Of a stretch of DNA of 64,000 nucleotides, positions 11,120 through 56,694 are shown piece by piece. Position numbers and translations under genes: made by a program. Position 1 is the first letter of the stretch. Each line of letters begins with the position of its first letter. The stretch covers positions 16,058,001 to 16,122,000 of the forward strand of contig NC_135767.1 of assembly GCF_052425735.1 (NCBI RefSeq), read 5' to 3'. This DNA comes from Oculina patagonica. Lineage: Eukaryota. Below the pieces are notes generated by a model that saw only the letters and a list, made by a program, of their open reading frames with translations, was not told the DNA's origin and ran no database searches.

Positions 11120-11366
11120 AAGATCGACAGGTGACACACTGAGGTGAGACCTAAACTGATCTAAACTCGTACAGGAATGCATGTAATTTGCGTTTTGTCA
11201 ATAGTTTCTATCTTGTTAAGACTCGGGAGAAAGTATAGATAAGAATAGACTCTTCGGGTTGTACTGGCGAAGTTTTCGCAGTGTAATGCAAGCACGATAT
11301 GTTATATAAAATCTTTCATTGTTTCTTGATATATTCTTCTTGGCCGTGAATCATTATTTCGCGTTA

Positions 11367-11592
11367 ATTCTACTCCCCCTGAATGGGATGCTAGTCTATT
11401 GCAGGGTTCCCCCCCCCCCCCCCCCCCCAGCATTGTGTCGCCGGTACCCATTTATACACCTGGCTGGAGAGAGGCACTATGAGAGTAAAGTGTCTTGCCC
11501 AAGAACACAACACAAGTGACTCCGGCAGGGGCTCGAACTCGGACCGCTCGATCCGGAGTCCGGCGCACTAACTATTAGGCCACCGCGCCTCC
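11367..11592 (-). mobile_element. tRNA-derived SINE (CORE-like central domain)
   Basis: Reverse complement has A box TGGCCTAATAGTT, B box GAGTTCGAGCC and TTCTTGGGCAAGACACTTTACTCTC core; homologous to 55403-55695. Confidence 0.85.
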
Positions 11593-12620: not shown

Positions 12621-12762
12621 CTATTGAAATTCATAGACTTCCATGCAAAATGGATCATTGGCTTGAATGTTTTTAGCACCAACGTATGTTGGATTACTAT
12701 GTCCCATGTCGTCATGGGCCGGGTGAGTCCGTCTTTTACGATGTAACGTTGGTTTGGCAAGA
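12621..12762 (-). CDS. Receptor exon 27: cytoplasmic tail with NPxY
   Basis: [46 protein letters not shown]; phase 2 matches exon 26. Confidence 0.8.
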
Positions 12763-36700: not shown

Positions 36701-39700
36701 AAGGAATTGTTACATTTGTTCGAGCAAATTTGAAGTGAAAGTTGCAAGTTGCGTCGATCAAGCTGTCAATCAATATTGTGACATTGCACCATAACACTGC
36801 AAAGTTCCCATCAAAAGACCACCCATTTTTACTGTAAAAGATAATTTTCTTACTGTCTTTGCATGTCTTTCCGTCCTGCTTCACAGCTAAACCGGTAGGA
36901 CATACACATTTGTAACCAGTTGTCTTCGCTACACAGAAATGGCTACACCCTCCATTGTTTACAGCACAAGGACTTGAAGCTTTTAAAAAAACACAGTATA
37001 AAAGAAAAACAAATGTTATAACGGAGCTAGTTAAGCTGCGCAGTTAATTATAACTTCACAATACGTTAGTGCTCATCATAATGCTACCGCAGATCGTAGT
37101 AAAACAGTATTTTCGGCCACAAAAAAAGATATCCTACATTTTCCTAGACTCATACAAACCAGTTTACCCAGAATGTGCTCTGGCTCTCCCCTTTTTTAGA
37201 AGAGAAAGCAAACAACTACACTGTCCCAAAGGTTTTGTTTTAGTGAACAAAAAAAGAAAAAACCTTCAAGGCCTACCCATGTATCAAACAAAAAAGGAAC
37301 GTTAAAGCAGAACCAGCGCCAGTGCCATTTCATCTACGAATCGTCATTTATTTCGTTTAAGCCCACTTTCCCCCAATTGTGTGTATAACCACTACAAAAC
37401 AATGAGAACAGTGCTGACAGCAGGGACAGCATGATTAAGATTTAACATGTTTAAGAGCGATTCGTAACGCGATAATCACAGGCTTGTATTTTCCCTTAAT
37501 CGAATTGAACAACGATTCACAGGCAAACAAGGATAATTAAGAATTTAATTAAGATCATTCTGACGGAAAACATTGTGTTTTTATAACCGTGTAAAAATTA
37601 TTGTCTTCTCTAACCAACCAACCAGCCAACCTATCAATCAATCGAACGATCGATCGATCGATGGTCATTCAATGAAAAATAAAAGACTTCTTTTTTTCTC
37701 ATGGAGGCAAACGCCTTGAAGTTTCGATTACTCTTGTTCCGAAGTTAGCACGAAATCTTCCGAAGTAGACAAAAAATCTTCCAAAGATTTCCGAAGTCGA
37801 CTCGAAGTCTTCCGTCAATTTACGAAGTGACCCGAAGTCTCACGAAGAAGATTTTCAAAGTTGACATGAAGTATCCCAAAGTGTTTCGAAGTTGAACCGA
37901 AGACTTCCGAAGATTTCCAAAGTTGATCCGAAGAGTTTTGGAGACTTCCGATATATGCCCGAAGACTAACGAAGATATCTAAAGTATACCCGGAGTATTC
38001 TGAAGAAGAAACGAGGAATTGTAAATCTTACAAATATGCTCGTTATTTTGTTAAGTATATTATAAATAAAATATCGAACGAGCTTCTCGTACCATTCGTG
38101 ATAAAATAGCTAAGAGTGATGTTTTAAAAGTTTGCAATTAAAAACATCACTCGTACCTATTTATCACAAATTGTGCGAGAAGGTCTTGTCATTTCCCATA
38201 CATATACCTGCAGGCTGTCGTGAATTGTCGTACAGTACGATGCCCATTGGCCGCCCGCCATTGATGCTGTAACTACGGAGCACTTTCCCAGTTGTGGCGT
38301 CCAGCTGGTGAACCTCCTTATGTGTATTCCAATCGGTAAAAAACAAGAAAGGAGGAATCAGTGCTACTGCAAAGGGATGTAAACCACTTTGTTGAAAAAG
38401 CTGTTTCCTGTTGTTGCCATTGTAGTCGACAGATTCTACTCTGTCTTTTCCAGCATCCACCCAAAAGATGCGTTTGTTTCCTTTGTCAAGCTCAATACCA
38501 TTTGGCCAATAGAGGTCTGTTGTTACGATGGCGAGTCTTTGGTTTCCACTCAGTAAGGCTCTTTCAATTTTTGGATTAGCGCCCCAGTCAGTCCAGATCA
38601 TTAAGCTGTTAAATAAGTTAATTAATGGATCGATCGATCAATAAAAGAACCAACCTACCAATCGATCAATTCAAACAATCAATAATAAGTGAACGACAGA
38701 GCGAGTGAACGAACTACTGAGGACAAGTCGTACACAGGGTACGCCTCTGAAAGGATAGTCCCCGTAGCATATGCCTATAAGACCCTACGAGGTATGCTTT
38801 TGTCAACATGGATCCCCTCGATAGTTCACATCACGCTATGAGCGTTCACTTTTCTTATTATCAAAGATCTCTTCGAGATATCGACTTTTTTGCATGAAGT
38901 TAGTATGAGTAGAAGGTTTATCCTGGGCATTGTTGTTCGAACATATCATGGAAGAATTCAAACGTCTTTCAGTTCAATCATTTTTTTTTTATTTTCGCGG
39001 AGGAAATGCTGTATTTGTCAGTCGCGACGGCTGGGCGCTTTGCGACTCATATACTTTGGGTTGGTTAAAAATGGTAAACTTTGACGTTTGCCTTAAATCG
39101 AAATAGCTGTTTCCTTTCGAGTTAGAAAGATTTCTACTCGGCTAAATGCAGGGTTCCCGATAAAGGTTACGCACGACAGAGCTACCTTTTGTCTCGTCAC
39201 GCAATCTAAACCCCACATTTAGAAGCAAATTTTCGTTAGGATATTACCAAAAGCCGCTTCTCCTCGCGTTATTCTTTACCTTACGGCTACACATGCCATT
39301 TCTAACGACTACATTTCCAGTAAAACAGTTGCCGTTTTTTTTCTAATGGCGATGCATTAACTTCTGAACAGAGGCAAAAACTTTTAGCGTTTACTGCTTC
39401 CACCGGAAGTAATTTCACAACAGGCTACAAAAACACTTGTAAATATCACTTCACACCTGCATTGAATGATGTTGCAATTCTAAATTGTGCAACTCGGGAG
39501 AAATAATCAATTGTCACGAAATGAGTTCCCTTTGGTTAACTATTAGCAACGTTTTAGTGAGTGAAAGACTTGTACCAGTACAAATTTGCGTTGTAAATCG
39601 TTTTAGGTTAAGTTAATATTAGTGCCTAAAGACTTGTACCATTACAAATTGCGTTCTTATTCGTTTTAAACTTCGTTGCCTTCGAGCGCTGAACCCTTCA

Positions 39701-41716
39701 CATTCTTAATTGGTTATGTCACGTAAGATTTGGGCTACTCACGTTTTTAATTCTTATATAACGTTTGTAAATTTGACAAGTCACGTTTTTTCTACAAGAA
39801 CGGAAGTGTTGAAGCACAACTATAGAGTGACACTTTACAAGTCACGCGCTTTGATCACTCACAGCGGAAAGTATTTCCTTGAGAAATTAAAACAGTCCCT
39901 TGAAAGTATACAAGAATGTGGTTCGAGATAGAACAACTTGTCCACTATTCTCCTTTTCTTCTTGCTTGTAAACAAGTAAAAAAGTCGAAAAAATAGTAGT
40001 ACATCAGTTCACACAGCCACAAATATAAACAGTAAGCCACTTTTTTTTCCGGCAAACATTAAGGGTGTTTAAATTTCCTCCAAGAACAAACCGCTGCTGT
40101 AATATGTGACCATTTTGCATTTGACAATAGCACTACTATCACTTACCCACTATCGGGATCCAAAGCTATTGCTCTGGGTTCCTCCAGCTCTGAGGAAATA
40201 AGACTACGTTGGTTATTGCCATTTAGGTCTGATACTGATATTTTGTCGTATGTTGTATCAGTCCAATACAACTGGGTTGTTCTCCATTCCACCGCTAGTC
40301 CATCGCAAACTCCAATACCAGTAATAATTGTTGTCGTGCTTGCAATGTCAATGTGGAAACGTTTGATGTTTTTCTCTGATACATCACTCCAAAATATGTA
40401 TCCCAAGCTGAAATGAACATCTAGTGCCACGGCTCTTGTTAATCCCAAAACAACCGAATTTACAGCTGACGTTTTGTAGTCGACGGTAACGATATCCGAG
40501 GTGTTCGATACCAGTAAGCAAGGTGGACTGCACAACTTGGCTAACATTGACGCAGAAGGAAAAGAAAGGGGAAAAACAACTTCAGGCTAACAAGAATATC
40601 TGTGTAGAGACAACCTGACACGCTGGGGTAGAGGATGATAAAATAGGTTTAAGCAGGAGATAAGTTTCTGATGTAAATTCCCATAAGGCGAGCAAAAAAT
40701 ATGTGTAAAAATATTAAGTTCCTCTAGTTCGAGCATTTTGAAGTGGATCAAGCTATTTTTGTACTTTTCTCTCCTAGTAGGCTGTTCACCATTTAATAAG
40801 CGAATATCAAATAAAGCAATATCATATCGGAATGTTTGCAAAATCAAAGGTATGTTCTATTTTGTTTGCCTTTTTTTTAGTGAGTGTATCGAAACCTCAG
40901 TGCGTAAATTTCAAGTTGTTTCATTCGGCAGAATAGAGCAGTTGGAAAATAAATTTTTCAGATGTTTTGCAGTGTAGCCTCACTGAATAGCTTTACCTTT
41001 TGTCTGTACTTTGTCTTGCTCTGCAAACTTTATTTGCAGTTTAAACTTTATTTCAATTTTGCAATTTCCTTTACCCACAGGCAACCTTGTCTCCTGCCTA
41101 ATCAGTACGTAAGTACGCAAACAAAATAAAGCAATTGGAAAATAAAAGTTTCTCGGCCTGATGGATTTACCAATTTCTCTTACTTGTGGATGTTTGGCTC
41201 GCGCCCGCCTTCGGCAGCTTCGCTATTAAGTGACATATTCTTAATTATTTTTTTAATTACTGGCAAAATTGACAGGAAAGTGATTTTGTGTCACTACATT
41301 GTGTTTACTTAATCTTAATATTTCTTAAAGTGTATAATTAAAAAACCACATCCTTGATCCTTTAAAGTATTTTTTTTAGGTAGCAATAAAGAGAACAAAG
41401 AGTTCTTTCCGCCGTTTTACCTGTCAGGGCGTATTTTTTTAAAACAAAATACGACACACACAAAAAAAAAGATCCGAAATGCTGGCGTCTCATAACAGAA
41501 GATTTATAGCTTCAGCCATTCTACTTGTCAGGGCGTTTTTTCTAAAAGAATATGAGACAAGCTGGCGCCTTGAAAGAAGATTCATGTTCAGTGGCCAATT
41601 GCTGTTTTAATTATTCATAGTTTATTTATAATCAGTTTACCGCCATAAACTTGCACACTTTTCTTCATCGTTAACAAATGCACGGACAGTGCATATATCC
41701 ACCAAATAACACTCAT
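12621..41716 (-). CDS. Type I transmembrane receptor: SP-(YWTD propeller-EGF)x3-CCP/HYR stalk-SEA-like-GCC-TM-NPxY tail (LRP-like head on SVEP1-like stalk), about 2096 aa if exon 16 is skipped
   Basis: 27 phase-compatible exons: 41716-41641, 40540-40147, 38605-38208, 36979-36854, 35167-34762, 34158-33764, 32149-32024, 31053-30630, 29794-29397, 28737-28609, 28102-27929, 26704-26519, 26180-25998, 25820-25569, 24559-24365, [23834-23691 has stop], 22412-22221, 21868-21620, 21052-20873, 20433-20230, 19411-19172, 18708-18472, 18045-17839, 17615-17130, 14380-14222, 13943-13811, 12762-12621. Confidence 0.88.
12783..12830. repeat. (AAAT)n microsatellite
   Basis: About 11 tandem AAAT units. Confidence 0.9.
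12896..13391. mobile_element. piggyBac-type MITE
   Basis: TTAA|CCCTATTCAGACCGGG ... CCCGGTCTGAATAGGG|TTAA; perfect 16-bp TIR and TTAA TSD. Confidence 0.9.
13811..13943 (-). CDS. Receptor exon 26: transmembrane helix
   Basis: [30 protein letters not shown]; tttcag| acceptor, |gtgagt donor. Confidence 0.85.
14222..14380 (-). CDS. Receptor exon 25: Cys-rich GCC2/ephrin-receptor-like repeat
   Basis: [40 protein letters not shown]. Confidence 0.9.
14872..15014. repeat. Near-perfect palindrome (about 55-bp arms)
   Basis: ctagaaagcgttcagttacgtttttaatttctcatacatttgtctata vs tatagacaaatgtatgagaaattaaaaacgtaactgaacgctttctag. Confidence 0.9.
15176..15556 (-). mobile_element. Hairpin-headed non-autonomous element
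   Basis: 150-bp hairpin 15404-15553, subterminal IR ttattat(a/g)ca, CCAATCA near distal end. Confidence 0.7.
15578..17019. mobile_element. Non-autonomous TIR element with 6-bp TSD, carrying two nested MITEs
   Basis: ACTTCT|GAGGCCCTGTTAGGG ... CCCTAACAGGGCCTC|ACTTCT; AGGGATAA subterminal repeats; nested 15948-16409 (TTACC TSD) and 15985-16167 (TA TSD). Confidence 0.85.
17130..17615 (-). CDS. Receptor exon 24: SEA-like domain with furin-type site
   Basis: ...[16 protein letters not shown]...LTVYF...; ends with C.KGQV.RGTKC leading into the GCC repeat, as in SVEP1-like proteins. Confidence 0.85.
17839..18045 (-). CDS. Receptor exon 23: sushi/CCP
   Basis: [14 protein letters not shown]...CNKGF...YHCTPDGTW...PDCS. 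Confidence 0.88.
18472..18708 (-). CDS. Receptor exon 22: HYR
   Basis: [14 protein letters not shown]...TDNVG...YTASD...[10 protein letters not shown]. Confidence 0.9.
19172..19411 (-). CDS. Receptor exon 21: HYR
   Basis: [12 protein letters not shown]...[12 protein letters not shown]...[17 protein letters not shown]. Confidence 0.9.
19610..20020. mobile_element. MITE with ACTCTTTTT..TATAAGAAT termini
   Basis: actctttttattttataagaat vs attcttataaaaaaaagagtgta; internal TAAGAAT repeats. Confidence 0.65.
20230..20433 (-). CDS. Receptor exon 20: sushi/CCP
   Basis: [12 protein letters not shown]...GYRLEG...SCLESGSWS...CK. Confidence 0.88.
20873..21052 (-). CDS. Receptor exon 19: sushi/CCP
   Basis: [11 protein letters not shown]...[30 protein letters not shown]. 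Confidence 0.88.
21620..21868 (-). CDS. Receptor exon 18: HYR
   Basis: [12 protein letters not shown]...[11 protein letters not shown]...[19 protein letters not shown]. Confidence 0.9.
22221..22412 (-). CDS. Receptor exon 17: sushi/CCP
   Basis: [12 protein letters not shown]...[28 protein letters not shown]...CR (frame not in ORF track). Confidence 0.88.
22555..23515 (+). mobile_element. Hairpin-headed non-autonomous element
   Basis: Hairpin 22557-22673; subterminal IR ttattaaattct (22674) / agaatttaataa (23504); AACCAATCAG near distal end. Confidence 0.75.
23691..23834 (-). pseudogene. Receptor exon 16: internally deleted sushi exon with in-frame TAG
   Basis: [47 protein letters not shown]; TAG at 23724-23722; intact tag|/|gtgag splice sites; 144 bp vs 174-207 bp for sibling exons. 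Confidence 0.8.
24075..24252. mobile_element. PIF/Harbinger-type MITE
   Basis: TTA|GGGACCAGTGATTA ... TAATGACTGGTCCC|TTA. Confidence 0.7.
24365..24559 (-). CDS. Receptor exon 15: sushi/CCP
   Basis: INC...[17 protein letters not shown]...GFW...PKCE. Confidence 0.88.
25569..25820 (-). CDS. Receptor exon 14: HYR
   Basis: DVLPPTF..CP...[13 protein letters not shown]...[19 protein letters not shown]. Confidence 0.9.
25998..26180 (-). CDS. Receptor exon 13: sushi/CCP
   Basis: VSCPPL...CVFGCQSGY...TCLQSGQWS...C. Confidence 0.88.
26519..26704 (-). CDS. Receptor exon 12: sushi/CCP
   Basis: [12 protein letters not shown]...FSCKVGF...CTENGTWSG...C. Confidence 0.88.
27060..27500 (+). mobile_element. 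Degenerate CR1/L2-like LINE ORF2 fragment
   Basis: [39 protein letters not shown]...PYFDY with frameshifts. Confidence 0.8.
27595..27777. other. Assembly gap (N run)
   Basis: 183 N. Confidence 1.
27929..28102 (-). CDS. Receptor exon 11: sushi/CCP
   Basis: [10 protein letters not shown]...C.LSCDVGY...C...GTWTG..P.C. Confidence 0.88.
28609..28737 (-). CDS. Receptor exon 10: EGF
   Basis: [26 protein letters not shown]...TCE. Confidence 0.9.
29257..29376. mobile_element. Short palindromic Harbinger-like MITE
   Basis: ggccagggccaaacgtcgagcttca..gtcgaacctaatgca vs tgcattacgttcgac..tgaagatcgacgtttgacccaagcc; TTA/TAA flanks. Confidence 0.65.
29397..29794 (-). CDS. Receptor exon 9: propeller 3, C-half
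   Basis: MYWSDWG, LYWCDA, LYWSDW. Confidence 0.92.
30630..31053 (-). CDS. Receptor exon 8: propeller 3, N-half
   Basis: [22 protein letters not shown]; acceptor position chosen for phase (AAG). Confidence 0.88.
31381..31727. mobile_element. MITE with GAG...CTC ends and 6-bp TSD
   Basis: ATCCCC|GAGTGTCTCAATGGG ... CCCATTGAAACCCTC|ATCCCC; internal TTAACCGT repeats. Confidence 0.85.
32024..32149 (-). CDS. Receptor exon 7: EGF
   Basis: [37 protein letters not shown]. Confidence 0.9.
32617..33614. mobile_element. Tc1/mariner/pogo-type non-autonomous element
   Basis: TA|CAGTATGTGGACCTAAATCCGGAC ... GTCCGGACCAAGGCCACGCACTG|TA; TCCGGAC subterminal repeats. Confidence 0.65.
33764..34158 (-). CDS. 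Receptor exon 6: propeller 2, C-half
   Basis: [27 protein letters not shown]. Confidence 0.92.
34762..35167 (-). CDS. Receptor exon 5: propeller 2, N-half
   Basis: [22 protein letters not shown]. Confidence 0.92.
36221..36563. mobile_element. MITE with about 63-bp TIRs and an internal 55-bp tandem duplication
   Basis: aaccttaaagatgcaaatttccactt...ttagacaggcgttctcaa vs ttgagaacgcctgtctaa...aagtggaaatttgcatctctaaggtt. Confidence 0.8.
36854..36979 (-). CDS. Receptor exon 4: EGF
   Basis: [41 protein letters not shown]. Confidence 0.9.
37738..38005. repeat. Degenerate (TT)CCGAAG minisatellite, about 11-bp period, adjacent to hairpin 38060-38185
   Basis: About 20 copies of C(C)GAAG-like motifs. 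Confidence 0.8.
38208..38605 (-). CDS. Receptor exon 3: YWTD propeller 1, C-half
   Basis: [31 protein letters not shown]. Confidence 0.92.
40147..40540 (-). CDS. Receptor exon 2: YWTD propeller 1, N-half
   Basis: [27 protein letters not shown]. Confidence 0.92.
41641..41716 (-). CDS. Receptor exon 1: putative signal peptide
   Basis: [25 protein letters not shown] then G|gtaaac, phase 1, joins exon 2. Confidence 0.65.
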
Positions 41717-42079
41717 GATCTTTGGTAAAAGCTCCTGTGCCAAAAAGAAAACAATACAAAGTAACTGACCAAGCACGATGCAGTGGTCTGTTAGAACAAA
41801 ATAAAGAACATCTTGTTGAGCGAGCCACAGAGCAAAGCAGTCTTACTCCAGGGAGAAACGTTAACCTGTTAGTTCCTTTATGAATGAATGATATCTATTG
41901 TAAGAAAACAAAACAAAATACACAGTGTCCTACATGGACTGTTTTGAAAACGTAAAGTTTGCGCGCGAATGACACGCGCGCCTTCACCTCCCTTATTCGC
42001 TTTTGATTCTCACATGGCGATGCTTGTCAAGTTGCATAAGGTGTGTCTCCGAGCTCCAACAGCGTTATACCCTTTGGGG

Positions 42080-42343
42080 AGAGGGGGAGTACTCCCATAT
42101 ATGAACTTTATAGGTATGTGCAGCTGTGAAGGGTATGGTTTTTAGTTTAGCGGTTTAGTCTGAGATAGGGTATAGAAATACAGAGAGTTTTGGTCTAGCA
42201 TTGGGTATGATTTGATTTGCCGATTAGTCTAGTTTAGGTTGCAAAATCAGTTGGACATGGTCTGGTATAGGGTAAGGGTTTCAAAGTTCCAGGCCTAGTG
42301 GCACACACCCTCCCGAAAATATACAAAGTCCCCCACCCCCGGG
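42080..42343. mobile_element. Non-autonomous element with G/C-rich ends (CCCGGG-type)
   Basis: gggggagtactcccatat...ggtatg..gggtat repeats...cccccacccccggg; left end degenerate. Confidence 0.45.
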
Positions 42344-43429
42344 CCTTACACTTCCGCGAAGAAAAGCTGGAGTGAATAAAACAGTCCAATAAAACAACTT
42401 GGGTACTTATTATAGTAAAGAACCAGTCGCTCAATTAGAAGCTGCGTCATGATATTTCACCAAATAACTGTTTTGTTGTTTTCCTAGATGTGCATCGTCG
42501 TGTCGTGTGAAGTTGACCTCGTTTTACCAAGTGCAGCATAGGCAAACGGAAATAGCAAACACGTACTTAGCAATTAAGAAAACTGTCACGAAGAGATTTT
42601 ATTTTAAAACGAAATCTGGTCAGTCACCGATATGACGAGACTCCACGTTATTCCAAGGAGGTATGTGGTATGGCAGTTTCAAATGTATAGTTATGTTTTG
42701 TTACCTCTGGTAAAATTACGCCCCGAACTAGGTAATAAATACTAGCGACGCTTAAGCTAGATCATTGCTTCTTACTGCGTTCACTTCAATTGCGAAGGAG
42801 ATTGCGAAGTGAATTTCGTTTGTTTTGTGCGTTGCGATTTCTAACTATCCAGACGTACAAAGAGGACAATCGGTAAGCTCTTCAATTCTCAAGTTCACAT
42901 CAGTATCTTGCTTTCGAGTATTATGTTATGTATCAAGTTATGCAACTATAGTTCTGCCTTGTTCCTTTCTTGTCACTTAGATTTGAATGTTGTTTTACTT
43001 GTATTTAAGTTTGACGATTTTCGATCCCTGGACTAATCATTCGTAAAGAAATAAAAAAAAAAACGCACCCAAGTGCATTGTTGAGTTAATAAGCACGCGG
43101 GAATTTAATGACGCGAGAGAAGTGCATAGAGAAGCACTGGGCGCAGCCGAGTGCTTCTCGTAGTTCTCGAGTGTTCTTAAAAATTCTCGCGTGCTTATAT
43201 AACTCAACAATGCTGGCGGAGAAAGGTTTTTGTTTCTTTTTCATACCAAAGTTTCTACAACTACTGCTAAATAATAGATATTCCAAATATTCTACATGTA
43301 GGACTATAAACAACTGGCCGAAAGGCGATGAAGCTGTTAATGCAAAGCAGGATATGCCAATAGCGTTGTGCTTTAAAATTTAGCGCAGTTATCGCTTTCA
43401 GTTTCTAACAAATTGAAAAGGGACTTACC

Positions 43430-43910
43430 CCTAATAAATTGAATTAGATGTGTCTGTGATCTCCTAAAGAGGCCTACTACTGTTTCCGCCAAAGTAGTAA
43501 AGTAGCAAAGAACTTATAGTAATATAGAATCTGGGCCTTAAAACCTCCTTTGCATAATCAGCATAATCAGTATTCGAAGTAAGATTGACCGAATTTGTGC
43601 AGAGCTGACCCCGTTTCAGCACTACGCGGATTCTCTTGTAAACAGTCATGTTTCCATGGCTATCAGTGAGGAAAAAAAAATTAACAAAGAAACCGAAGCC
43701 TTTAAAGTATATCACTTAGCATGCAGCTTGCATCAGTGAATTAACACTTTACAAAGTATATATTTATAATTTTTTTTTTATGGCGAATTGATTTTGCCTC
43801 GTACTTTTTTAAGACAAATTTTCAGTTCATAGTCAAGAGAAAGTTGCTCTACACACGCAGAAGGGTTTCAGTCTGAAGTGGTCTGGACCTGCTCTCGTTA
43901 AAGGTAAGTG
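43430..43910 (+). repeat. Diverged direct duplication, copy 1 (copy 2 at about 46215-46745)
   Basis: Shared blocks, e.g. ttgtgcagagctgaccccgtttcagcactacgc and cagaagggtttcagtct.aagtggtctggac. Confidence 0.85.
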
Positions 43911-46214
43911 TTCGGTTAATACTGTTTTAGACATCCGCTTCATTAATGTAATGATCAACTCCGTTATACAATAAAATCTATAAAGACTGAATGAGAATAA
44001 AATTCCATGGAATTCCAGGCATACCTTGAGCAGAATAGAAATCCACAGTCGTGTGATCATGACGTATGTTAACTTGCTCTGTTTTGAAGACACTTAGCTG
44101 TGTTAAATCAAGCAGAAATGGAAGGCAAAATCAGTTAAATGATAGGAGTCACTTATTCTTAGCTGGCATGAGGGTTAGTAATAACCGATTTTGATCTGAA
44201 CAGAAGTTAAGAGATATCGAAACGCAGTCAAACGAATTCGTGTAAATAAAATGTTATTTAAATTTATAAATCCTCAGAATAAGGGTTCATTTGTCCACCT
44301 ACATTAGATACTATAAAGAAATTAAACGAGTTGCTTCAGGAGGAATGTTTCGGGGGGGAAATATATATCTAAATTTTTTGCGAACATTTTTATCCCTTAC
44401 TACAGCCTCGACAGGCTTAAGAGGCCTCATGGGCCCAATAAGGATATGTAACAGCCTCAACAGTTGTTCTCAGAACACGCTCATTAGTTTGCCGAATATA
44501 ATACAAAACTAAGAAGCTATTCAAAAGCAAGTCAATCGCGATGAAAAAAAAAGATGAGTTAAGATTGATAAAAGCAAGAATGGATATTGTTTGCTTTAAT
44601 AAAGGTCGAAGAACTAAATCACAACATTTTCATTCTACTTGTAAGCAACCTCCGTTACAGGGCCTAAACTATAGGCTGCAAAATTTGGAAGAGTCGAGCA
44701 AAAATCAATATCAACGGTAACATTGCAAATATGCAACTTTTTTTTCATTTTTAACACAGGACACGTGAAATGCTTATCAACTTGTCTTTCGATGCGCATA
44801 AACATCTGATGTCATATTAAATGTGCTTAAAATATATTGCTTTTTTCTGAGAAAACATTCTCGTAGTGATCACCTCTTACTCAAGGTCCTTTTTGAGAAG
44901 ATTTTCAAAATAATTCACTGGAACCTATTGCACCAGTTTTGCCCATCAAGAACGTAAATAAAATTCCATTAGGGCTTCTTACAGTGTATAAGCTAAAGAT
45001 TACGAAACTGATAACAAGTTAGAGAATAGAAAATAATATGTAGGTTATACTAAAGCTGCTAAGAAACTGATTCGACTTGAAAATCCAAAAAATCGCAAAC
45101 AAACCAAACAAAACAAAACAAAAGAACACCATTTTAAAATTCTTTCGGAGCAAAATAAAACAAATTGTTAGCTCAACTGAGAATGCGGATATTTTGATGA
45201 CTATTTCAAAAAAAAGTTGCCATCTTTATTATTTACTATTTCAATTTTCATAGCAAATTGATCAATAACACGTATTTAGTAGGTCAACTACGTCTAATTT
45301 TTATATGAAAGACTAGTTTTAATCATGCTGAACTACAGTCAATGTTACACGAATTTTCCTTTTTTGCGACTTGCAACGCAACGATGACGACTGGATATCA
45401 TTGCAATATGGGTGTCACATGTACGTTTGAAATCAATTTCTCGGAAACTTGCAACAACCCCGGTTTTTTTTTTCGGCTGCAGTCTTTAATCTTGGACGAA
45501 GAAACTCCTTTATACCCCCAAAGAGCGAACACCCCCATTCCCGATCTTTCCCATTTCAACTGAGACGCAGTTTCTTGTGTTTCTTGGATTTTAATTTGCC
45601 ATTTGCTACTAGCAAATTGGCAATTAGCATCCCAATTTTGCGCTGCGGTAGTGCAAAGTTGCTCGGCAAGGAGTTGGATAACTAAACTAGATGAAATGTT
45701 TTTTTCTTTTTAGCTTTGTTGTCATTTGCGTTAGACAACTCTGGAATGTTAAAACGCTATTAATATATAAACAGTCGGACGTTTCGTGGATAACCTTTGG
45801 ATAACCCCTTCAATAGCTCAGTCACGTCTCTGCTAGGTACGGTGATAAACAACATCGATATGCTTAAGAAGCACAATGAGATGGAAAAAATTTGAGACTG
45901 CCTGTTCGCACATAAAATACAAATGGTTAATTCGTAAAATCTCACTAAAACAAACTTCGCATTACCCGCCCTACGAGGGTGAATCTTGAAGGAAAAAATA
46001 TGTCGCTCTGATGAGTACGAATAACAAATACTATTAAAAAGGTGTTCTGCTCGTATAAACCATCTACCAAATTTGTTAAGGGTACAAAGGAAACGTTTTG
46101 GATGTTGATAACAAGCGCTTCAGTTGAAAGCAATATATGAAATTGCGGCTTCAAATTTAGTACAACAATCACTTTCAGTTTCAGGGGGGTTCCTTAAATG
46201 AAATGGGAAGTACT

Positions 46215-46745
46215 CCTAATAAAATGCAGTAGATGTGTCTGCGATCTCCAATACAGGCCATGTATATAGTTTCCGCCACGCAAAACTGGAGTAAAAAGCC
46301 AAAACAAAGTCTATTTTGGATAATATAGGATCTAGTCCTTAAAACCTATTGCCTAGGAGAGAAATTGTAAACAAAAGAATGACCGATTTTGTGCAGAGCT
46401 GACCCCGTTTCAGCACTACGCTGATTCTATTGTAAACAATTCATGTTTACATGGTTATATATGAAGTAGAAGAAGTTAACAAAGAAAGCGAAACCTTTAA
46501 AATAAATTACTTAGCTTAAGTGTGTTGATCTAAGACCGCGGAATGTCAACAAAAGGTAGCTGCAGTTTGCATCAGTAAAATAACACTTTACAAAAGGTGC
46601 AATACGTTAAATTGATTTTATTTTTACTGAAAACTTATTTTCAGTTTAAAGTCGAGAGTAAATTTTTGTATTTTAAAAGCTTTTCTGCCCACACAGAAGG
46701 GTTTCAGTCTAAAGTGGTCTGGACTTGCTATCGTTTGAGGTAAAC
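46215..46745 (+). repeat. Diverged direct duplication, copy 2
   Basis: Colinear with 43430-43910. Confidence 0.85.
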
Positions 46746-47087
46746 ACGCACGCAGTAATGAACTTCGTTACACTCTTTTCATAAGAATATTGACTAAAGC
46801 GAGACGGCATAAGCAAAATAATACCGACAGAAATCAATTAAAGGTTTGGATCTTCAGGAGTTACATGAATATTAAGAAAGGTAGCTACACGACCGAAAGG
46901 AGGTAGCTGACTTTTCTTTCTTTCCATAGACTTATAACATTACTAATTACGTGGAAAGGAAGTTATTTCTGGATTCCGTCGTCGTTGGGAAAGGGGGATA
47001 TTTCATGTGAAAAATGCATTAGCCCTACATTTTGCGTCAAGAGTAATTTTGGTATGTCCATCCACTAGCCTACGCTTCTCCTGCAAC

Positions 47088-47280
47088 ATGACCTCCTTCG
47101 CCAAGTTAGTTGTCGTTGTTTTGGTGCTAGCATTTGTAGTCATCCCAAATTGTGTAGATGCATGTGGATCAAGATCAGGTCGAAGAACGCCATCAAGACC
47201 AAGAGCAAGAGCAAATCCACCTCCAAGTTCATCCAGCCGTAGAAGAAGCTCGTCGTATTCTTATAGACACTGTGGACCTT
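47088..47280 (+). CDS. Gene 4 exon 1: signal peptide plus Arg/Ser-rich segment
   Basis: MTSFAKLVVVVLVLAFVVIPNCVDA-CGSRSGRRTPSRPRARANPPPSSSSRRRSSSYSYRHCGP; donor |gtaagt. Confidence 0.8.
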
Positions 47281-50200
47281 GTAAGTATGCCTGATACATA
47301 AACATATATTTTTGACTCCTTTTCATTTCGGTCAATTTTGTTCAAATTTTAAATGCTGCATGCATTACCTTACATTACCTTTTTTTTTCAAGGACGGTTC
47401 GTTATTAACAAAACTTACAAAGACGCGATATTTTAATGGCCATTATTGCTTCGAAAATTGCTCAGTTCCAAATGACATATGAATCTTATCTTCTGGACTG
47501 AAATTCAAAATGTTACAAGCAACTGAGGTCGAAGGTTTCATATACTAGCCAATATATTAAAATATAATTAATGTGCCAATAAAATGTATGAGTCAAGTTT
47601 TTGACAGAGAAAATATTAAGTTATATGCACTGGATGAAAAACGATATGATGAACATAGCAGTCGGGCGGCGTTATCTAACTTCTACAGATCGTGCGGACA
47701 ATCTTGCGCCCGTATTTTAATAGTCCGTACGCCGATACATCCCAACAATATTTGTGCATATGTTTTTTTTTTTGAATTCATGTTTGTTTGTTTGCATTAA
47801 CATTATAATTCTAAATAATACATCGAGGGGACCTTTTTCTATTTTATTGTGCTAGATCAGCTACCAGGTCATTAAAATTATTCCGGTGGAATTTTACTAC
47901 ATTTGTGTTTCTTTCATTTTGAATTGAAGTCTGTTAACCAAAGTAAATAAATGTGTTGTTTTTGTTTTTGCTGTTGTTGGAGTATCACTCGGTTGTAGCA
48001 AATAAACTTCTCACTTTGTTTCGACAAAGAAAAACGAAAGTGTAGGCTCTCACCTGCATCTATTTAACAAATAGATTCCATTTTGCCGTGCGTCTGTTAG
48101 TTCTAGATCACTGATGGCGTCACAATGTGGTAAGAACAAAAGCGTAGCCCACGAGCTGCTAGGCAAGTGGGTCTCTGATGTTCTTACCACATTTTGACGT
48201 CTTCGGTGATCTATAAATAACTGAACAGACCCACGGAAAAATATTTTCTTTTATACAATAACAGAAGTCTTCAGTACACTTCAGTGTAAGCAATCGCGCT
48301 ACCGGTGAGCTAAATTTGTTTTCATTTCACGATAAAGTTTTCCGTAACCACGAAGCACTGTTAAGCCGATTTAATAAAATGGAAAATCAAAACATCAACG
48401 AAAAAACTAACCTTTATTCCATTTGGAAAGTTGTTAAAATCTGTGAACTTTAACCTCAGCGTTCAACTGTCATTCATAGATTTCTCGTGGAGTCGTCCAA
48501 CTCTTCAACATTGGACAAAAATCTTACAGATTTCGACAATTTTTTCGAATCATTCGCTGTCTACTTCAAGCTTGTTTAGCCCAGTTAAATGTTTCGAAAG
48601 GTGAACGATACCTGGCGGATCGTTTCTCGCTGTATATTTATAATTTAGCTGAACATTTTTGTTTTGCCGTGGCCTAGTGAGTTTGAAAAACTTTGCCGAC
48701 AACACCATACTAACAATGACAACACTGATTTGAACTATGAACTCTGATCATGCGCGTGAGTCACACCGCGCATTGACGTCATCTGTGCGTCTGTACTCAA
48801 ATAGAAAACAGGACATCAACCAATAACAACGCACGCAGTAGCTCAGTTATTTTATAAAACTCGATAGACGCCCGCTGAGCATAAAACAACTGTATGGGCC
48901 TGTTTAAATGGAAAAAACGTTGTCCCTGGTAGGCGGGTGGCCCTTCATGACGAGCCACCTCATGCCAGGCGAGAGAACATTTCATAAATCTCTTTGTAAG
49001 TGGCCGCGAAACGTCTTTATGAGAAATTCAAAACAGTGGCTTCAGTAGGCAGGGTGATCCCGGGTGGAGCAGCATTAGCATTGAAGGTAGGGTGAGCCTG
49101 GGGCCCGAGTCAACTTTTTTTTTTCCAGGTGAACACTTGGGCTGTTTTTGACTAGCTTACCTGGGACAAGTCTAGAGATATTGATTGCGCGTGAAATGGC
49201 AAATTTTATACTCGGTTGGCAAGGACAATATTTCTCATTTTAACGCCCGGTAAAAAAATTGCTCAGAGGAGAGGGCAACTCTCCTTCCAGGGCAATTGTT
49301 CTTCATACAAACAGGCCCTAAATCCCGTTATGCATCCCGAAGGGAGTCGCATTTTCTACTAGGATCCTACTTGAAAAGAAATTACTATCTCACCTGCCTA
49401 GCAAGAATCCTTGGTCTGCAAATATATTAAGAACGGTCAAAAAGCAAATCCCGAAAGGAGTGGCTAGATCTTTCAGATGAAATAAGCCACTCTTAGGTTG
49501 ACCCTGATTTTAAACTTCTTGTAAATCAAAAGACTACTGTTGGACTGTAACTTTTAAATTGGCGAACGTTGTTAATATCCTATATATGCTACAAAGCAAA
49601 ACATCTTACCTTGATCAAACTTGTGTAATTAAAAACCAGCACGACGTTGCAATACGTTCATGTGCTTATATACAGCTGTTTAGAAAAAGGTTATCCAACA
49701 GAAGCACAAGAGCGCACGCGACAAACCAAAAGGTATTATGGGTAGTTGTTCAGAATTGCTTTTTAGAAGCCGGGCGCGCATGAGCGAAGTAAGTTCACCG
49801 ACTGTGCTTTAGCAAAATGGCTAGAGAAACCATGAATAGAGATATTACAGGAAACATTGGCGGAAAGAATTTTTTCAGTTAAGCCTGGGTGATAAGAACG
49901 AATGTTAGTGTAGGCATCAGTTCAAGCTCTGCATATCGAAAGAAAAGAAACCACTCTGCTATGAAGGGAATCATCTTGTTTTGCTATTCAGTTTAAGTAA
50001 CGTCCAGTAAAGGAAGTGTGCCAGTGGAAAGAAAAGCGAGAGAATGCTGTTTTCTTTCCCCTTGCCATTTTAGCGCCAAGGCATGGCTATTGGGGCTCGT
50101 GGCAGAACTGGGGCAGTGTAGCTTGCCAAAGTGGTTATAAGACCAGATACCGCTACTGTAACAATCCTCCCCCAGCATACGGTGGATCTTACTGCAGAGG

Positions 50201-53200
50201 AATAAGTCGATCTGGAAGAAGAGATTGTGATGAATGTTCTCTTGGTTTGGCACAATGCGAGCATCTATGCAGTAACAGTTACGGTTCTTACAAATGCAGT
50301 TGTTATTCAGGTTATAAAACATCAACGCAAAACTGGAAAAGATGTGAAAGTAAGTACATTTCTGTACTAAAACGAAAACGCTGCTTACTGTTTAATGAAA
50401 CGACCTTAGAATTCAAACAACAGATGATCAAAGACATATAAGTTTACAAATTAACAAAACAATTTATAAAATAATATACAATTATGAGTTATAAATATAG
50501 TCGAACCTCTCCGTACGGACACCTCTCTAATACGGACACCTCTCTATTACAGACAATCTCCGATGTCCCGACAAAATTCTCATATATATTTTCTTAAAAA
50601 AAAAAACCCTCAATAATACGGACAGCGGACACTTAATCCTGGCTCCAGGGAACAAATTCATATAAATTTAACCTCTTTATTACGGACACTCCGGTGATTA
50701 GGCGGTGATATTTTGCGTTCGTAGCGCAATTTCCTGTTTGTGGTTACAAAAACAACAACGTAATGCTTTATTCCTCTTAGACGTTTTCGGATTTGTGCTA
50801 AGTGTAATTTTTTTACCAGAAGCATTGCTTTGCAGAGCATTTCAAACAACTAAATACCTTAAGCTGTTTATAAAGTCAACAGTGACGTCATAGTGGTGAC
50901 CTCTTTAACCCTTTCCCCCCCGAATTTCCCCCCAAAACGCGTTTTTTAACCGTTAAACTGCATTTTTGGTGCTATGACCTTGAATTTCCATAAACTGTGC
51001 TAGAAAAGCAATCTTCACACTGTAGCAACATTTTCATAACGATTCCATTAAAAAATGTACAATATTTCACTTTGGTGCATGCGCATAAGCCAAACTTTGG
51101 ACAATTACAAGCCTTGAGTTTTTGAGTACAGATTATGCTTCCAAAACGCATTGTGTTTTTCTTTGATTTGCTCTGTTAGAATGCAACCGATACTCAAAAT
51201 AAACAGTCCTGTAGAAAGGTCAATCCTAGCTCTATCAGCTCCTTATCCCAAATTCCACTGACGTGCTTATTGATGACGTCACAAGTGGTTCAATGACCGC
51301 GCCTTCAACTAGCGCCTAAAATGCGTGTTTATGAATGAAAGGGTTAATAACGATACCTCTTTATTACGGACACTTAACGCTCTCCCTTCGGTGACCGTAT
51401 TAGAGAGGTTCAACAGTATGATAACTTAGGACTTCTCACGCTTGTTGATAGCCTTAGTTCAATTGTTTGACCACTGACTGCTTGTCGATAAGGTTCGCCT
51501 TCCTAGTTTTGACTATAGTGTCACGAGCAGGCATAATGTATAAGGTCAGTCTGTTGTAAAAACTTCTATGAAGATAAATGATCGTCAGAAAGAAAATGGT
51601 CTGAAACTGTATTAGGTCTTGTCGATGGGGGTCGCCCTTTCACCTGGTTATCGGTGTTCATTGAAGGGGTCTTTTAAGAGCCCTCGTTTGTCTTGCCTAT
51701 AACTTCCGCTGCCGGCATTGTACCATAATTATAAATGATTTTTTATAGAGCTGCTGTCAATTTGATCAGGTATATAGGTTTGGTCTCCCCAGTACCAACG
51801 AGTGTATAGTCGATTTATTCGTCAGTGATGTAAGGGTAGGTAACACAATTAATCCCTCATCTATATATGTACCTATCAATTTTAGGAATCACCTGTAACA
51901 CAAATGACTGGCAATCCCCAAGCAACGGGAGGATGTCTTCACCTTGTCGTGGTAAACCCCAAGTGGTTGCTGGGACTTACTGCGTGGTCACGTGCAATCA
52001 TGGCTTTGAAATAGTTGGAAATGCAAGCTCTCTTTGTGAAAATGATGGCCACTGGAACCCTAACGCAACTGCAAATTGTCGAGGTCAGATGATCTGTTTT
52101 TGTGTCATAAGAAATGTTTTCTCAATAGGCAAAATAAGGGCCTTCTACACGATGCGATTTCCTCATTAGACCATCTCGTCATGAGATAACAACTTTGCAC
52201 AATTTGGCTGAAATTAAACGCATTATTTAGTGAAAGTTATGGTGGATTAATTATCAAATATTTAGTTAAACATTCACTTCCAATTTGAATCAAATAACCA
52301 TTTTGTAAGCGGAACGCTTCTGCCGTTTTGACTATAGCTGCCTATCCTACAAGATCTTCAACCGTGCCGCTTTTGAAATATATTTTTTTTAATGCAAACT
52401 CATACTTGTACTCCCTTGAAGAAAAGCTTGTTTGAGGTTTATAAGATGAAATAACGTAATTAATTTTTTCTCCATCCTCTGTCTTTACGGCTAATAGAGG
52501 AACTTAGTTGCGGGCTACCAGTAGAGTAGTTTTTGGCTAAGTGGAGTTCCACGTTAAATAAAGTATCTACATTTATCTACATCTACAACTGGCAACCTAG
52601 CAAACTTCAAAGGGGGAAAAAGGCTCTAAACCTACAGCTGGAAGGTCTACGATCCTGGGCAAACGTTTGTTAGGCACTGGAACACCTTTCTTGTAATGAT
52701 TCAAACATTTTCTGTTTGTTAGTTGCTCGGTCCCATACAGAGCCTGTTGTAGCTTTTTCACGGTCAAGCTCAAGAAGCGAACAAAAAAAAAAATGTTAAA
52801 CTTTTTACTGTGTATTAAACTTTGGTTCAGCTCACCATGTTTTTTTAATTTCAGTTCGTGCATGTCCTCCCTTAAACGTACCGGACAATGGACAAATCAC
52901 TCCTGCGATTTGTCAAACGAAACCATTACATGGTCAAAATTGTTCCTTTGAATGTAGTCCAGGCTACGCACGCTTTGGGCCCAACTCAAACACGTGTGAT
53001 AATGGGCATTGGAGAGAGGGAGGCTTTCACTGCCAAGGTAAGCTAACTCGAAACCTATGATATGATCATAAAAGCCATCTCAGTAGACTTGCTTAACAGC
53101 TCGTTGACTACTATTTAAGCAACAGACCGCACTTTCTAGGGCTTTACTGGCGTAATAAAACCACGCGGGATGTTGGGAGAACACGAGAAAAGCTTATAAA

Positions 53201-56200: not shown

Positions 56201-56582
56201 CGTATTCCGGAAAAAAAAATATACTGGAGGTAGCTTTTTTACGATAGAGCATCAACAATGACGACATACCCCGTTTTATGACGCGTCCGCTTTTCTAATA
56301 ATTTACCTCGACAGCTTATTATTACAAGTACTATTATTATTGTGATATTTTCACATTGGGTCACTCATCTTTCAGTTCTTCGATGCTCCGTGGTATTCGC
56401 ACCTGCAAACGGGAGGCTTGAGAATAATGGCTGTGGAAATGTGTTTGGAATCGTCTGCCGCTTTACGTGTTTTAAGGGGTATGAACTAAAGGGATCTGTT
56501 GAAAGAAAATGCGAAAGAAGAGAAGGAACAGATATAGTGTACTGGACGGGAAACGGAACTTCTTGCGAGGGTTAGTAACTAT

Positions 56583-56613
<31 letters not shown>

Positions 56614-56621
56614 TTGAGCAA

Positions 56622-56657
<36 letters not shown>

Positions 56658-56658
56658 A

Positions 56659-56694
<36 letters not shown>

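What the first reader, a model, noticed from the sequence alone, without database searches (positions are those of the whole stretch)
41641..47280. Head-to-head pair of related sushi/HYR surface-protein genes with different heads: candidate co-regulated recognition locus
Seen: the two ATGs diverge 5.4 kb apart. Both proteins use the same stalk cassette, but one displays acidic/neutral YWTD propellers and the other a strongly basic Arg-rich peptide plus TSP1-EGF. Established: YWTD propellers bind short peptide or EGF-type ligands; linked gene pairs underlie several self/non-self and adhesion systems; HYR and TSP1 repeats occur in the sea-urchin egg bindin receptor EBR1. Inference (speculative): a linked receptor-ligand or heterodimer pair acting in adhesion, allorecognition, gamete or symbiont recognition. 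This is the best candidate here for an undescribed system.
Basis: inference. Interest (0 to 1): 0.72.

Follow-up and report, generated by a model that had tools for sequence, protein, structure and literature searches.

The report
Head-to-head coral Polydom-family gene pair
Two neighbouring stony-coral genes that point away from each other are old relatives from the Polydom/SVEP1 matrix-protein family, and nothing yet shows that they bind each other or act in self/non-self recognition.

Summary
Gene A (minus strand, ATG 41716) and gene B (plus strand, ATG 47088) diverge 5,371 bp apart. A encodes a signal peptide, three YWTD-EGF modules, a sushi/HYR stalk, an unannotated SEA-like module, one ephrin-receptor-like (TKE) repeat and a membrane anchor. 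B encodes a signal peptide, an Arg-rich tail, TSP1 plus Ca-EGF and a sushi/HYR stalk that runs off the window.

Both belong to the cnidarian SVEP1/Polydom family (PMC12549020). In a distant coral assembly the B orthologue continues with TKE x3, about 20 EGFs and a pentraxin. That is the canonical Polydom order, and A carries the same core, truncated and membrane-anchored.

The head-to-head arrangement is kept in that distant coral (dS about 1.5), with the ATGs only 1.8 kb apart. It was not seen upstream of A-type genes in three other assemblies. In one of these a B-like head lies on another contig.

Pairwise dN/dS is 0.1-0.4 for both genes, and A and B repeats are only 30-40% identical. The best reading is an ancient inverted duplication within the Polydom family. 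Co-regulation is possible. Receptor-ligand pairing is untested, and allorecognition is unsupported. The scan holds no record of this pair on other DNA.

The parts
41641..41716 (-). Gene A exon 1: the ATG at 41716, a hydrophobic signal-type peptide of 25 codons plus 1 base, and a GT donor just below 41641 (phase 1)
   Evidence: Sequence read. The peptide, donor and phase are conserved in L002, L006 and L008.
41957..42650 (.). Promoter-proximal non-coding blocks of gene A (41957-42008 and 42463-42650), conserved in the closest relative
   Evidence: blastn identity of 69-85% to L002, L004 and L006 at matching spacing upstream of exon 1.
28523..40586 (-). Gene A head: three YWTD beta-propeller plus EGF modules in nine exons. 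The first coding exon after the signal exon is about 40147-40540.
   Evidence: Pfam Ldl_recept_b E 1e-14 to 1e-28 and FXa_inhibition/EGF E about 1e-12. The exons are colinear at 70-90% amino-acid identity in L002/L006 and 60-79% in L010.
17804..28145 (-). Gene A stalk, in the order sushi x3, HYR, sushi x2, HYR, sushi x2, HYR x2, sushi. An assembly gap at 27595-27777 lies inside it.
   Evidence: Pfam Sushi and HYR hits. The tail half is colinear in Desmophyllum pertusum MU827312.1 (L005).
17119..17682 (-). Gene A 'X' module: no Pfam family, a predicted SEA-like alpha/beta sandwich with a multibasic RRRR loop
   Evidence: No Pfam hit. 51 homologues were found, and where they sit in multidomain proteins the region follows HYR/sushi and precedes Ephrin_rec_like where present. 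AlphaFold2 model pLDDT 82. Structural matches are middling, Z 6.5-7.5 to SEA domains and Z 10 to thyroglobulin 1274-1466.
12621..14435 (-). Gene A C-terminus: an Ephrin_rec_like (TKE) exon at 14112-14435, a transmembrane exon at 13810-13986, and a last exon ending at the stop at about 12621 with an NPTY motif
   Evidence: Pfam PF07699 E 9e-8. Transmembrane segment read. The tail is read and compared: in D. pertusum NPTY reads NLTY, while the final YEFQ is conserved.
43367..43910 (+). Intergenic direct repeat, copy 1. It ends in a donor-like AG|GTAAGT.
   Evidence: the repeat finder, blastn and MAFFT show about 75-80% identity to copy 2. It is not conserved in L001, L004 or L008.
46145..46745 (+). 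Intergenic direct repeat, copy 2, about 340 bp upstream of gene B's ATG
47088..47280 (+). Gene B exon 1: the ATG, a signal peptide and an Arg/Ser/Pro-rich basic tail; phase-1 donor
   Evidence: The orthologous exons are in L001 (14 Arg) and L008 (a hexa-Arg stretch). Charge about +10.5.
50074..50348 (+). Gene B exon 2: a TSP1 repeat (WxxWxxW) plus a calcium-binding EGF
   Evidence: Pfam EGF_CA E 2.6e-7 and TSP_1 E 2.4e-3, the latter below the curated cut-off. 68% identical in L001 and 58% in L008. Splice sites.
51886..64000 (+). Gene B stalk, cut off by the window end. Exons are sushi 51886-52082, sushi 52855-53036, HYR about 54420-54672, sushi 56376-56569, sushi 57349-57539, sushi about 58927-59126, HYR 60371-60618, sushi 61103-61296, sushi 61786-61976, sushi 63335-63522, and HYR from 63828. 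An assembly gap lies at 54090-54267.
   Evidence: Pfam. Phase-1 splice sites. Exon order is colinear with L008/L012 at 48-75% identity.

Best explanation
The locus holds two anciently related members of the cnidarian SVEP1/Polydom family, lying head to head. They most likely arose by an old inverted duplication, after which each copy acquired different ends.

Gene B is the Polydom-type copy. It is a very large secreted matrix protein whose N-terminus carries a polybasic tail, one thrombospondin repeat and a Ca-binding EGF. These are features that typically tether proteins to sulfated glycans and cell surfaces (inferred). The sushi/HYR stalk follows. By its orthologue, the gene then continues with an SEA-like module, three TKE repeats, about 20 EGFs and a pentraxin.

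Gene A keeps only the core (sushi-sushi-HYR-HYR-sushi-SEA-like-TKE), extended by further sushi/HYR units. It has gained an LRP-type head of three YWTD-EGF propellers, a membrane anchor and a short Tyr-motif tail. It is therefore a type I receptor-like protein, probably cleaved at the RRRR loop (inferred).

Both genes are conserved under purifying selection. They most likely act in matrix adhesion and epithelial remodelling, as described for Polydom paralogues in Nematostella. Close linkage may let them share regulatory DNA, but it is not obligatory, because some coral lineages have lost it.
For: - Domain content of both genes: Pfam.
- Membrane anchor and tail of A.
- Splice junctions and signal exons conserved in relatives.
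- The B orthologue continues sushi-sushi-HYR-HYR-sushi-X, then 3 Ephrin_rec_like, about 20 EGFs and a Pentaxin, all on the same strand. A ends with the same sushi-sushi-HYR-HYR-sushi-X-TKE order.
- Homologues of the X module are fragments or multidomain proteins in which the region follows HYR/sushi and, where present, precedes Ephrin_rec_like. One is annotated as SVEP1-like in Branchiostoma.
- PMC12549020 describes an expanded Nematostella Polydom family. It includes Polydom-like proteins with an EGF-Sushi-HYR-TKE core and extra TSR domains, all co-expressed and upregulated at the larva-to-polyp transition.
- The pair is kept head to head in ERZ25073805/ERZ25073751, with colinear exons on both sides and dS about 1.5 for both genes.
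- dN/dS is 0.08-0.59 per exon and 0.09-0.20 over the A head exons.
- A and B repeats are 30-40% identical, so the duplication is old.
Against: - B's TKE, EGF and pentraxin part is seen only in the distant orthologue. The window ends at the third HYR, and no transcript evidence joins those exons into one gene.
- No vWFA domain was found in either gene, so neither has the full vertebrate SVEP1 architecture.
- Positional matching of individual sushi and HYR units between A and B is ambiguous, except for the last sushi and X. Common descent of the whole stalk, as opposed to independent repeat expansion, is therefore inferred.
- No expression or binding data were available.
- A-type genes are multi-copy in some assemblies. 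Some A-type loci without a B gene nearby could therefore be paralogues, which complicates the history of the pair.
Confidence: 0.72

Rival explanations
1. One reading: a functionally coupled, co-regulated pair. Secreted B, through its polybasic tail or its TSP1-EGF head, is the ligand or heterodimer partner of A's acidic YWTD propellers in adhesion or recognition of symbionts, gametes or neighbours.
For: - The head-to-head order is kept across a deep coral split, with only 1.77 kb between the ATGs in the relative.
- The polybasic stretch after B's signal peptide is kept in three lineages even though the sequence itself is not.
- The charges are complementary.
- From established knowledge: YWTD propellers of LRP5/6, LRP4 and nidogen bind short peptides or EGF-type modules.
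Against: - No B exon lies within 8.6-15 kb upstream of the A-type genes in ERZ25067872, ERZ25067556 or ERZ26858540. In ERZ25067872 the B-like head is on another contig.
- In the window the ATGs are 5.4 kb apart, with separate conserved promoter-proximal blocks.
- Gene order is said to be generally well kept among corals (my own recollection, not checked here). Retention of one adjacent pair is then weak evidence of coupling.
- No binding or expression test could be run.
Confidence: 0.12
2. A polymorphic self/non-self (allorecognition) or gamete-recognition locus, comparable to Hydractinia Alr, Botryllus fuhc/fester or sea-urchin EBR1.
For: - Sushi domains occur in Botryllus fester (abstracts). 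HYR and TSP1 occur in EBR1 (general knowledge).
- The genes are linked and encode large extracellular proteins.
Against: - Purifying selection acts on both heads. The propeller exons have dN/dS 0.1-0.35 and are 80-90% identical in amino acids at dS about 0.4. TSP1-EGF has dN/dS 0.23.
- Two samples of the distant species are 99.995% identical over 20.5 kb spanning both heads, although they may be the same genotype.
- The two A-type contigs in one assembly differ by dN 0.015 and dS 0.077, which is not elevated non-synonymous diversity.
- There are no Ig-like Alr domains, no CUB and no metalloprotease as in EBR1.
Confidence: 0.03
3. Chance adjacency of two members of a large sushi/HYR gene family, with no special shared origin or shared regulation.
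For: - A and B repeats are no more similar to each other than repeats within one protein.
- The pairing is absent in several relatives.
- The family is expanded in cnidarians (PMC12549020).
Against: - The same two gene types sit in the same divergent orientation at nearly the same exon spacing in a lineage separated by dS about 1.5. The YWTD-1a exon to TSP1-EGF exon distance is 9.3 kb there and 9.4 kb here.
- Both genes share the specific terminal order sushi-sushi-HYR-HYR-sushi-X-TKE, including the rare X module.
Confidence: 0.1

Closest known systems
SVEP1/Polydom and the cnidarian Polydom and 'Polydom-like' proteins (Hydractinia CnPolydom; Nematostella NvPolydom1-3 and four Polydom-like proteins; PMC12549020)
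   Same: - Sushi/CCP + HYR + TKE (Ephrin_rec_like) core.
- EGF modules.
- An extra N-terminal TSR, as in some Nematostella Polydom-like proteins.
- By its orthologue, B continues with TKE x3, an EGF array and a pentraxin.
   Different: - No vWFA domain was found.
- A adds three LRP-type YWTD propellers, a membrane anchor and a cytoplasmic tail. None of these is mentioned in the main text of PMC12549020 for Polydom-like proteins (no occurrence of YWTD, LDL, propeller or LRP).
- B starts with a polybasic tail.
- The head-to-head genomic pairing is not mentioned in the passages of PMC12549020 that were read.
LDL-receptor family (LRP4/5/6, LDLR)
   Same: - Tandem YWTD beta-propeller plus EGF modules.
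- Type I membrane topology.
- A Tyr-based NPxY-like motif (NPTY) in the tail of gene A.
   Different: - There are no LDL-receptor class A repeats in any exon.
- The propellers are followed by a sushi/HYR/SEA-like/TKE stalk.
- NPTY reads NLTY in D. pertusum.
Conserved divergent (head-to-head) gene pairs and microsyntenic blocks held by cis-regulatory constraint (abstracts of PMC3514665 and PMC7817982)
   Same: Divergent orientation kept across a deep split, with 1.77 kb between the ATGs in one lineage.
   Different: Classical bidirectional pairs have start sites less than 1 kb apart (PMC7817982 abstract). Here the ATGs are 5.4 kb apart, and the pair is broken in other lineages.
Allorecognition and gamete-recognition loci (Hydractinia Alr1/2, Botryllus fuhc with fester and uncle fester, sea-urchin EBR1)
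   Same: - Linked genes for large extracellular proteins.
- Sushi, HYR and TSP1 domain types overlap with fester or EBR1.
   Different: - No sign of hypervariability or positive selection.
- Different domain architectures.
- No phenotype link.

Membership tests
SVEP1/Polydom family (broad sense, including cnidarian Polydom-like proteins) | Core of Sushi/CCP, HYR and ephrin-receptor-like (TKE) modules | tested here: met
   For A, Sushi x8, HYR x4 and Ephrin_rec_like are all in the window. For B, Sushi and HYR are in the window. TKE x3 is seen only in the orthologue L013.
SVEP1/Polydom family (canonical) | EGF array followed by a pentraxin domain | tested here: inconclusive
   Both are present downstream of the B orthologue on the same strand in L013. 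The corresponding part of the window's gene B lies beyond base 64000. Gene A has neither and ends in a membrane anchor.
SVEP1/Polydom family (canonical) | N-terminal von Willebrand factor A domain | tested here: not met
   No VWA hit in any exon of A or B. The N-termini are the YWTD propellers in A and the polybasic tail plus TSP1-EGF in B.
Nematostella-type 'Polydom-like' proteins (PMC12549020) | EGF-Sushi-HYR-TKE structure without vWFA or pentraxin, with extra N- or C-terminal domains such as TSR | tested here: met
   A fits: EGF, Sushi, HYR and TKE, with no VWA and no pentraxin. B's head has the TSR plus EGF, but its orthologue carries a pentraxin, so B is closer to the full Polydom type.
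LDL-receptor family | YWTD beta-propeller plus EGF precursor-homology modules | tested here: met
   Ldl_recept_b hits in six exons and FXa_inhibition/EGF hits in three.
LDL-receptor family | Ligand-binding LDL-receptor class A (LDLa) repeats | tested here: not met
   No Ldl_recept_a hit in any exon of gene A.
Bidirectional-promoter gene pair | Divergent transcription start sites less than about 1 kb apart | tested here: not met
   The ATGs are 5,371 bp apart in the window and 1,772 bp apart in L008. Start sites themselves are unknown without RNA data.
Allorecognition determinant loci (Alr, fuhc/fester type) | Extreme allelic polymorphism or diversifying selection in the recognition domains | tested here: inconclusive
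   Between-species dN/dS is 0.1-0.4. L008 and L009 are 99.995% identical. No population sample was available, so within-species diversity could not be measured properly.
Sea-urchin EBR1-like egg receptors | ADAMTS-like N-terminus with alternating TSP1/CUB repeats and then hyalin-like repeats (from memory of the literature) | tested here: not met
   No CUB or metalloprotease domain was found. There is only one TSP1 repeat.

The most novel reading that the evidence does not exclude
The pair is a conserved functional module. A secreted Polydom-type matrix protein (B) and a membrane receptor built from the same Polydom core (A) would be transcribed from a shared intergenic control region. B's polybasic/TSR head would dock on A's acidic LRP-type propellers, giving corals a built-in matrix-ligand/endocytic-receptor system for adhesion, remodelling or partner recognition.
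Probability: 0.1. Interest if true: 0.7.

Novelty: new variant of a known kind. Interest (0 to 1): 0.4.

Why it matters
Polydom/SVEP1 proteins are adhesion and morphogenesis factors, from cnidarians (larva-to-polyp remodelling, immune challenge) to vertebrates (lymphatic development, integrin and Tie1 binding). In cnidarians their receptors are unknown.

This locus shows that corals have a membrane-anchored offshoot of the Polydom core, fitted with LRP-type propellers. It sits next to a Polydom-type gene, and that arrangement has lasted across a deep coral divergence.

That gives a concrete and cheap hypothesis to test: co-expression, and binding of the B head to the A propellers. It also marks the unannotated SEA-like module as a conserved part of the family.

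If the two proteins turn out to be unconnected in function, the locus is an ordinary case of old tandem paralogues in a well-conserved genome.

Tried and rejected
1. Full-length annotated proteins could not be retrieved. The homologue search only sees proteins of 0.55-1.75 times the query length, and spliced models cannot be passed by reference. All comparisons therefore went exon by exon.
It returned mostly exon-sized fragments.
3. Walking upstream of the B-like head in ERZ25067872 (L001) was impossible because no called gene lies there. Whether another A-type gene sits upstream of it is unknown.
4. Walking to the A head in Desmophyllum pertusum failed for the same reason. Only the tail half is visible, and downstream synteny with the window was not detectable within 8 kb.
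5. The JGI metagenome scan for B-head loci gave only contigs of 5.2 kb or less, which are useless for synteny.
6. Rfam found no RNA family in the 40500-48500 stretch. ARAGORN, run on the whole window, found no tRNA gene in the spacer.
7. CpG observed/expected shows no clear island.
8. The idea that the spacer repeat is an LTR pair or a duplicated first exon could not be settled.
9. A literature search for the ENA accession numbers found nothing, so the species of the related assemblies are unknown.
10. A recent duplication of the stalk was rejected on the 30-40% identity between A and B repeats.

Full report
**What the window is.** The window is metazoan DNA of about 38% G+C with short domain-sized exons. 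The closest named relative of one exon is a protein of the stony coral Desmophyllum pertusum. There is no assembly gap between 41.6 and 47.3 kb.

**Checking the observation: gene A.**
- On the minus strand an ATG at 41716 opens a 25-codon hydrophobic exon that stops at 41641 before a GT donor in phase 1.
- The next exon starts at about 40540 with a matching phase-1 acceptor.
- Peptide, donor and acceptor are conserved in three related coral contigs.
- Pfam finds three YWTD propellers, each split over two exons, each followed by an EGF.
- After them come eight sushi and four HYR exons, one exon with no Pfam family (called X here), and one Ephrin_rec_like (TKE) exon.
- A clear transmembrane exon lies at 13810-13986, and a short tail with NPTY ends at about 12621.

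**Checking the observation: gene B.**
- On the plus strand an ATG at 47088 opens an exon that ends at 47280, also in phase 1.
- It encodes a signal peptide and a roughly 43-residue tail with 11 Arg and a charge of about +10.
- The next exon (50074-50348) encodes a WxxWxxW thrombospondin repeat and a Ca-binding EGF. The EGF_CA hit is solid. The TSP_1 hit (E 2.4e-3) is below Pfam's cut-off, but the motif is plain and conserved.
- Sushi and HYR exons follow to the end of the window. One sushi exon at 57349-57539 only came to light through the orthologue.

The two ATGs are 5,371 bp apart.

**How alike the two stalks are.** The repeats of A and B are only 30-40% identical, which is no closer than repeats within one protein. 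This rules out a recent duplication. The order of the last modules is nevertheless specific. A ends sushi-sushi-HYR-HYR-sushi-X-TKE and then the membrane anchor.

**What gene B becomes beyond the window.** I followed the B orthologue in a distant coral assembly (ENA ERZ25073805, loci L008, L012, L013).
- Its exons are colinear with the window's B from TSP1-EGF to the third HYR, at 48-75% identity.
- It then continues on the same strand with sushi-sushi-HYR-HYR-sushi-X, three Ephrin_rec_like repeats, about 20 EGFs and a pentraxin.
- From my memory of the human protein, this is the order of the central part of SVEP1/Polydom.
- The X exon finds 51 homologues. Where they sit in multidomain proteins, the region follows HYR/sushi and, where present, precedes Ephrin_rec_like. 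One of them is a Branchiostoma protein annotated as SVEP1-like.

**Fit to the known family.** The Nematostella matrisome paper (PMC12549020) describes three Polydom paralogues and four shorter Polydom-like proteins. The shorter ones have an EGF-Sushi-HYR-TKE core and extra TSR or Ig domains. All are co-expressed and upregulated at the larva-to-polyp transition. B therefore looks like a Polydom-type matrix protein. A looks like a Polydom-like core that has gained an LRP-type head and a membrane anchor. The main text of that paper never mentions YWTD, LDL, propeller or LRP. The A architecture may thus be an undescribed variant.

**Is the pairing conserved?** The answer is mixed. Note that A-type first-propeller exons occur several times on single contigs in some assemblies. 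Some of the A-type loci examined may therefore be paralogues rather than orthologues.

| Assembly (loci) | Distance from window (dS) | Result |
|---|---|---|
| ERZ25073805 and ERZ25073751 (L008, L009, L010); the two differ at about 1 base in 20.5 kb | about 1.5 for both genes | An A-type gene with three colinear YWTD-EGF modules lies divergent to the B orthologue. The first propeller exon to TSP1-EGF exon distance is 9.3 kb (9.4 kb in the window). The ATGs are only 1,772 bp apart. |
| ERZ25067872 (L002/L004 and a 92-95% identical second contig, L006), the closest relative | about 0.43; A propeller exons (first two propellers) 81-90% identical | The A orthologue keeps the promoter-proximal blocks, but no B exon lies in 11.6 kb upstream. 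A B-like head (exon 1, TSP1-EGF 68%, first sushi 69%) lies on another contig (L001). It is followed by transposon fragments and 7 kb without further B exons. |
| ERZ25067556 (L003) | about 0.86 | No B exon in 8.6 kb upstream of the A-type gene's exon 1. |
| ERZ26858540 (L007/L011) | about 1.6 | No B exon in 15 kb upstream of the first propeller exon. |

The simplest history is an ancestral pair that was retained in at least two deep lineages and rearranged in others. The species behind these ENA assemblies could not be identified.

**Selection.**
- Pairwise Nei-Gojobori estimates give dN/dS of 0.08-0.35 for the propeller exons, 0.23 for TSP1-EGF and 0.1-0.6 for stalk exons.
- The two A-type contigs within one assembly differ by dN 0.015 and dS 0.077.
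- Nothing points to diversifying selection, although exon-wide averages cannot exclude a few selected sites.
- B's head changes roughly three times faster than A's between the window and the closest relative.
- The polybasic stretch right after B's signal peptide is kept in composition in all three lineages (11 Arg, 14 Arg, and a hexa-Arg), while its sequence and length are not.

**The spacer.**
- Only the first 0.9 kb upstream of A and about 35 bp upstream of B's ATG are conserved with the closest relative.
- The middle holds a 0.55-kb direct repeat, at 43367-43910 and 46145-46745, about 75-80% identical. Both copies end in a donor-like AG|GT.
- Taking out the stretch from the first copy through the second would leave about 2 kb, close to the 1.8 kb seen in the distant relative.
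- Whether this repeat is a transposon remnant or a duplicated first exon cannot be told without RNA data.
- No RNA family, tRNA gene or CpG island lies in the spacer.

**The X module.** An AlphaFold2 model built on 29 homologues reaches mean pLDDT 82.
- It is an alpha/beta sandwich. A low-confidence loop carries the family's conserved RRRR between two strands.
- Structural matches are middling: thyroglobulin 1274-1466 at Z 10, then SEA domains of TMPRSS6, MUC16 and GPR126 and the EpCAM/Trop2 C-domain at Z 6.5-7.5.
- I read it as SEA-like with a furin-type site, with moderate confidence.

**Verdict.** The locus is best explained as an old head-to-head pair of Polydom-family paralogues. B is a secreted Polydom-type matrix protein, and A is a membrane receptor built on the same core with an LRP-type head. 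Shared regulation is plausible, given the 1.8-kb spacing in one lineage and the co-expression of the whole family in Nematostella. It is not required, because the linkage is broken elsewhere. Direct binding of B's head to A's propellers is an attractive idea that remains entirely untested. The allorecognition or gamete-recognition reading has no support from the rates of change seen here.

Noticed in passing
window 17119-17682 (-): This exon matches no Pfam family but has 51 homologues. Where these sit in multidomain proteins, the region follows HYR/sushi and precedes Ephrin_rec_like where present. The AlphaFold2 model (pLDDT 82) is an SEA-like alpha/beta sandwich with a conserved RRRR loop. 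It looks like an unannotated, probably furin-cleaved module of the SVEP1/Polydom family.
   Followed up: partly
window 43367-43910 and 46145-46745 (+): A 0.55-kb direct repeat (about 75-80% identical) lies inside the A-B spacer, and each copy ends in a splice-donor-like AG|GTAAG/GTAAA. It could be a pair of LTR-like ends or a duplicated promoter plus non-coding first exon of gene B. It is not conserved in relatives.
   Followed up: partly
window 55343-55689 and 11365-11629; L001 2594-2821: Copies of a tRNA-Arg-derived SINE-like element. ARAGORN calls a tRNA-Arg(CCG) at 55407-55479. The copies lie in an intron of gene B, downstream of gene A, and also in the related coral.
   Followed up: no
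window 57349-57539 (+): A sushi exon of gene B that escapes a 75-residue open-frame filter. It was found only because the orthologue L008 has a matching exon.
   Followed up: yes
window 12621-12842 (-) versus L005 15239-15313: The NPTY motif in gene A's cytoplasmic tail reads NLTY in Desmophyllum pertusum, while the C-terminal YEFQ is conserved. The endocytic NPxY reading of the tail is therefore not secure.
   Followed up: partly
window 10003-10661 (-) and 1698-2945 (+): Two further open frames lie downstream of gene A. One is a pair of overlapping frames that look like a multi-pass membrane protein. The other is a 416-residue Ser/Pro/Gly-rich frame. Neither has a convincing Pfam family.
   Followed up: no
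L002 versus L006 (ENA ERZ25067872, contigs ctg20639 and ctg20462): The same assembly holds two A-type contigs that are 92-95% identical through introns and flanks (coding dS 0.077). They could be haplotigs, a recent segmental duplication, or two close species in one sample.
   Followed up: partly
L004 17806-20184 (-); L010 14305-14571 (-): Transposon-like open frames occur in the relatives. A 792-residue frame with a C2H2 finger lies upstream of the A orthologue. A PAX-type (Tc1/mariner-like) fragment lies inside an intron of the A-type gene.
   Followed up: no
one search hit list (contigs of 1,040,089, 540,004, 218,950 and 160,010 bp): Several 74-81% identical copies of gene A's first propeller exon lie on the same contig in some assemblies. 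A-type genes therefore appear to be tandemly multiplied in some corals.
   Followed up: no
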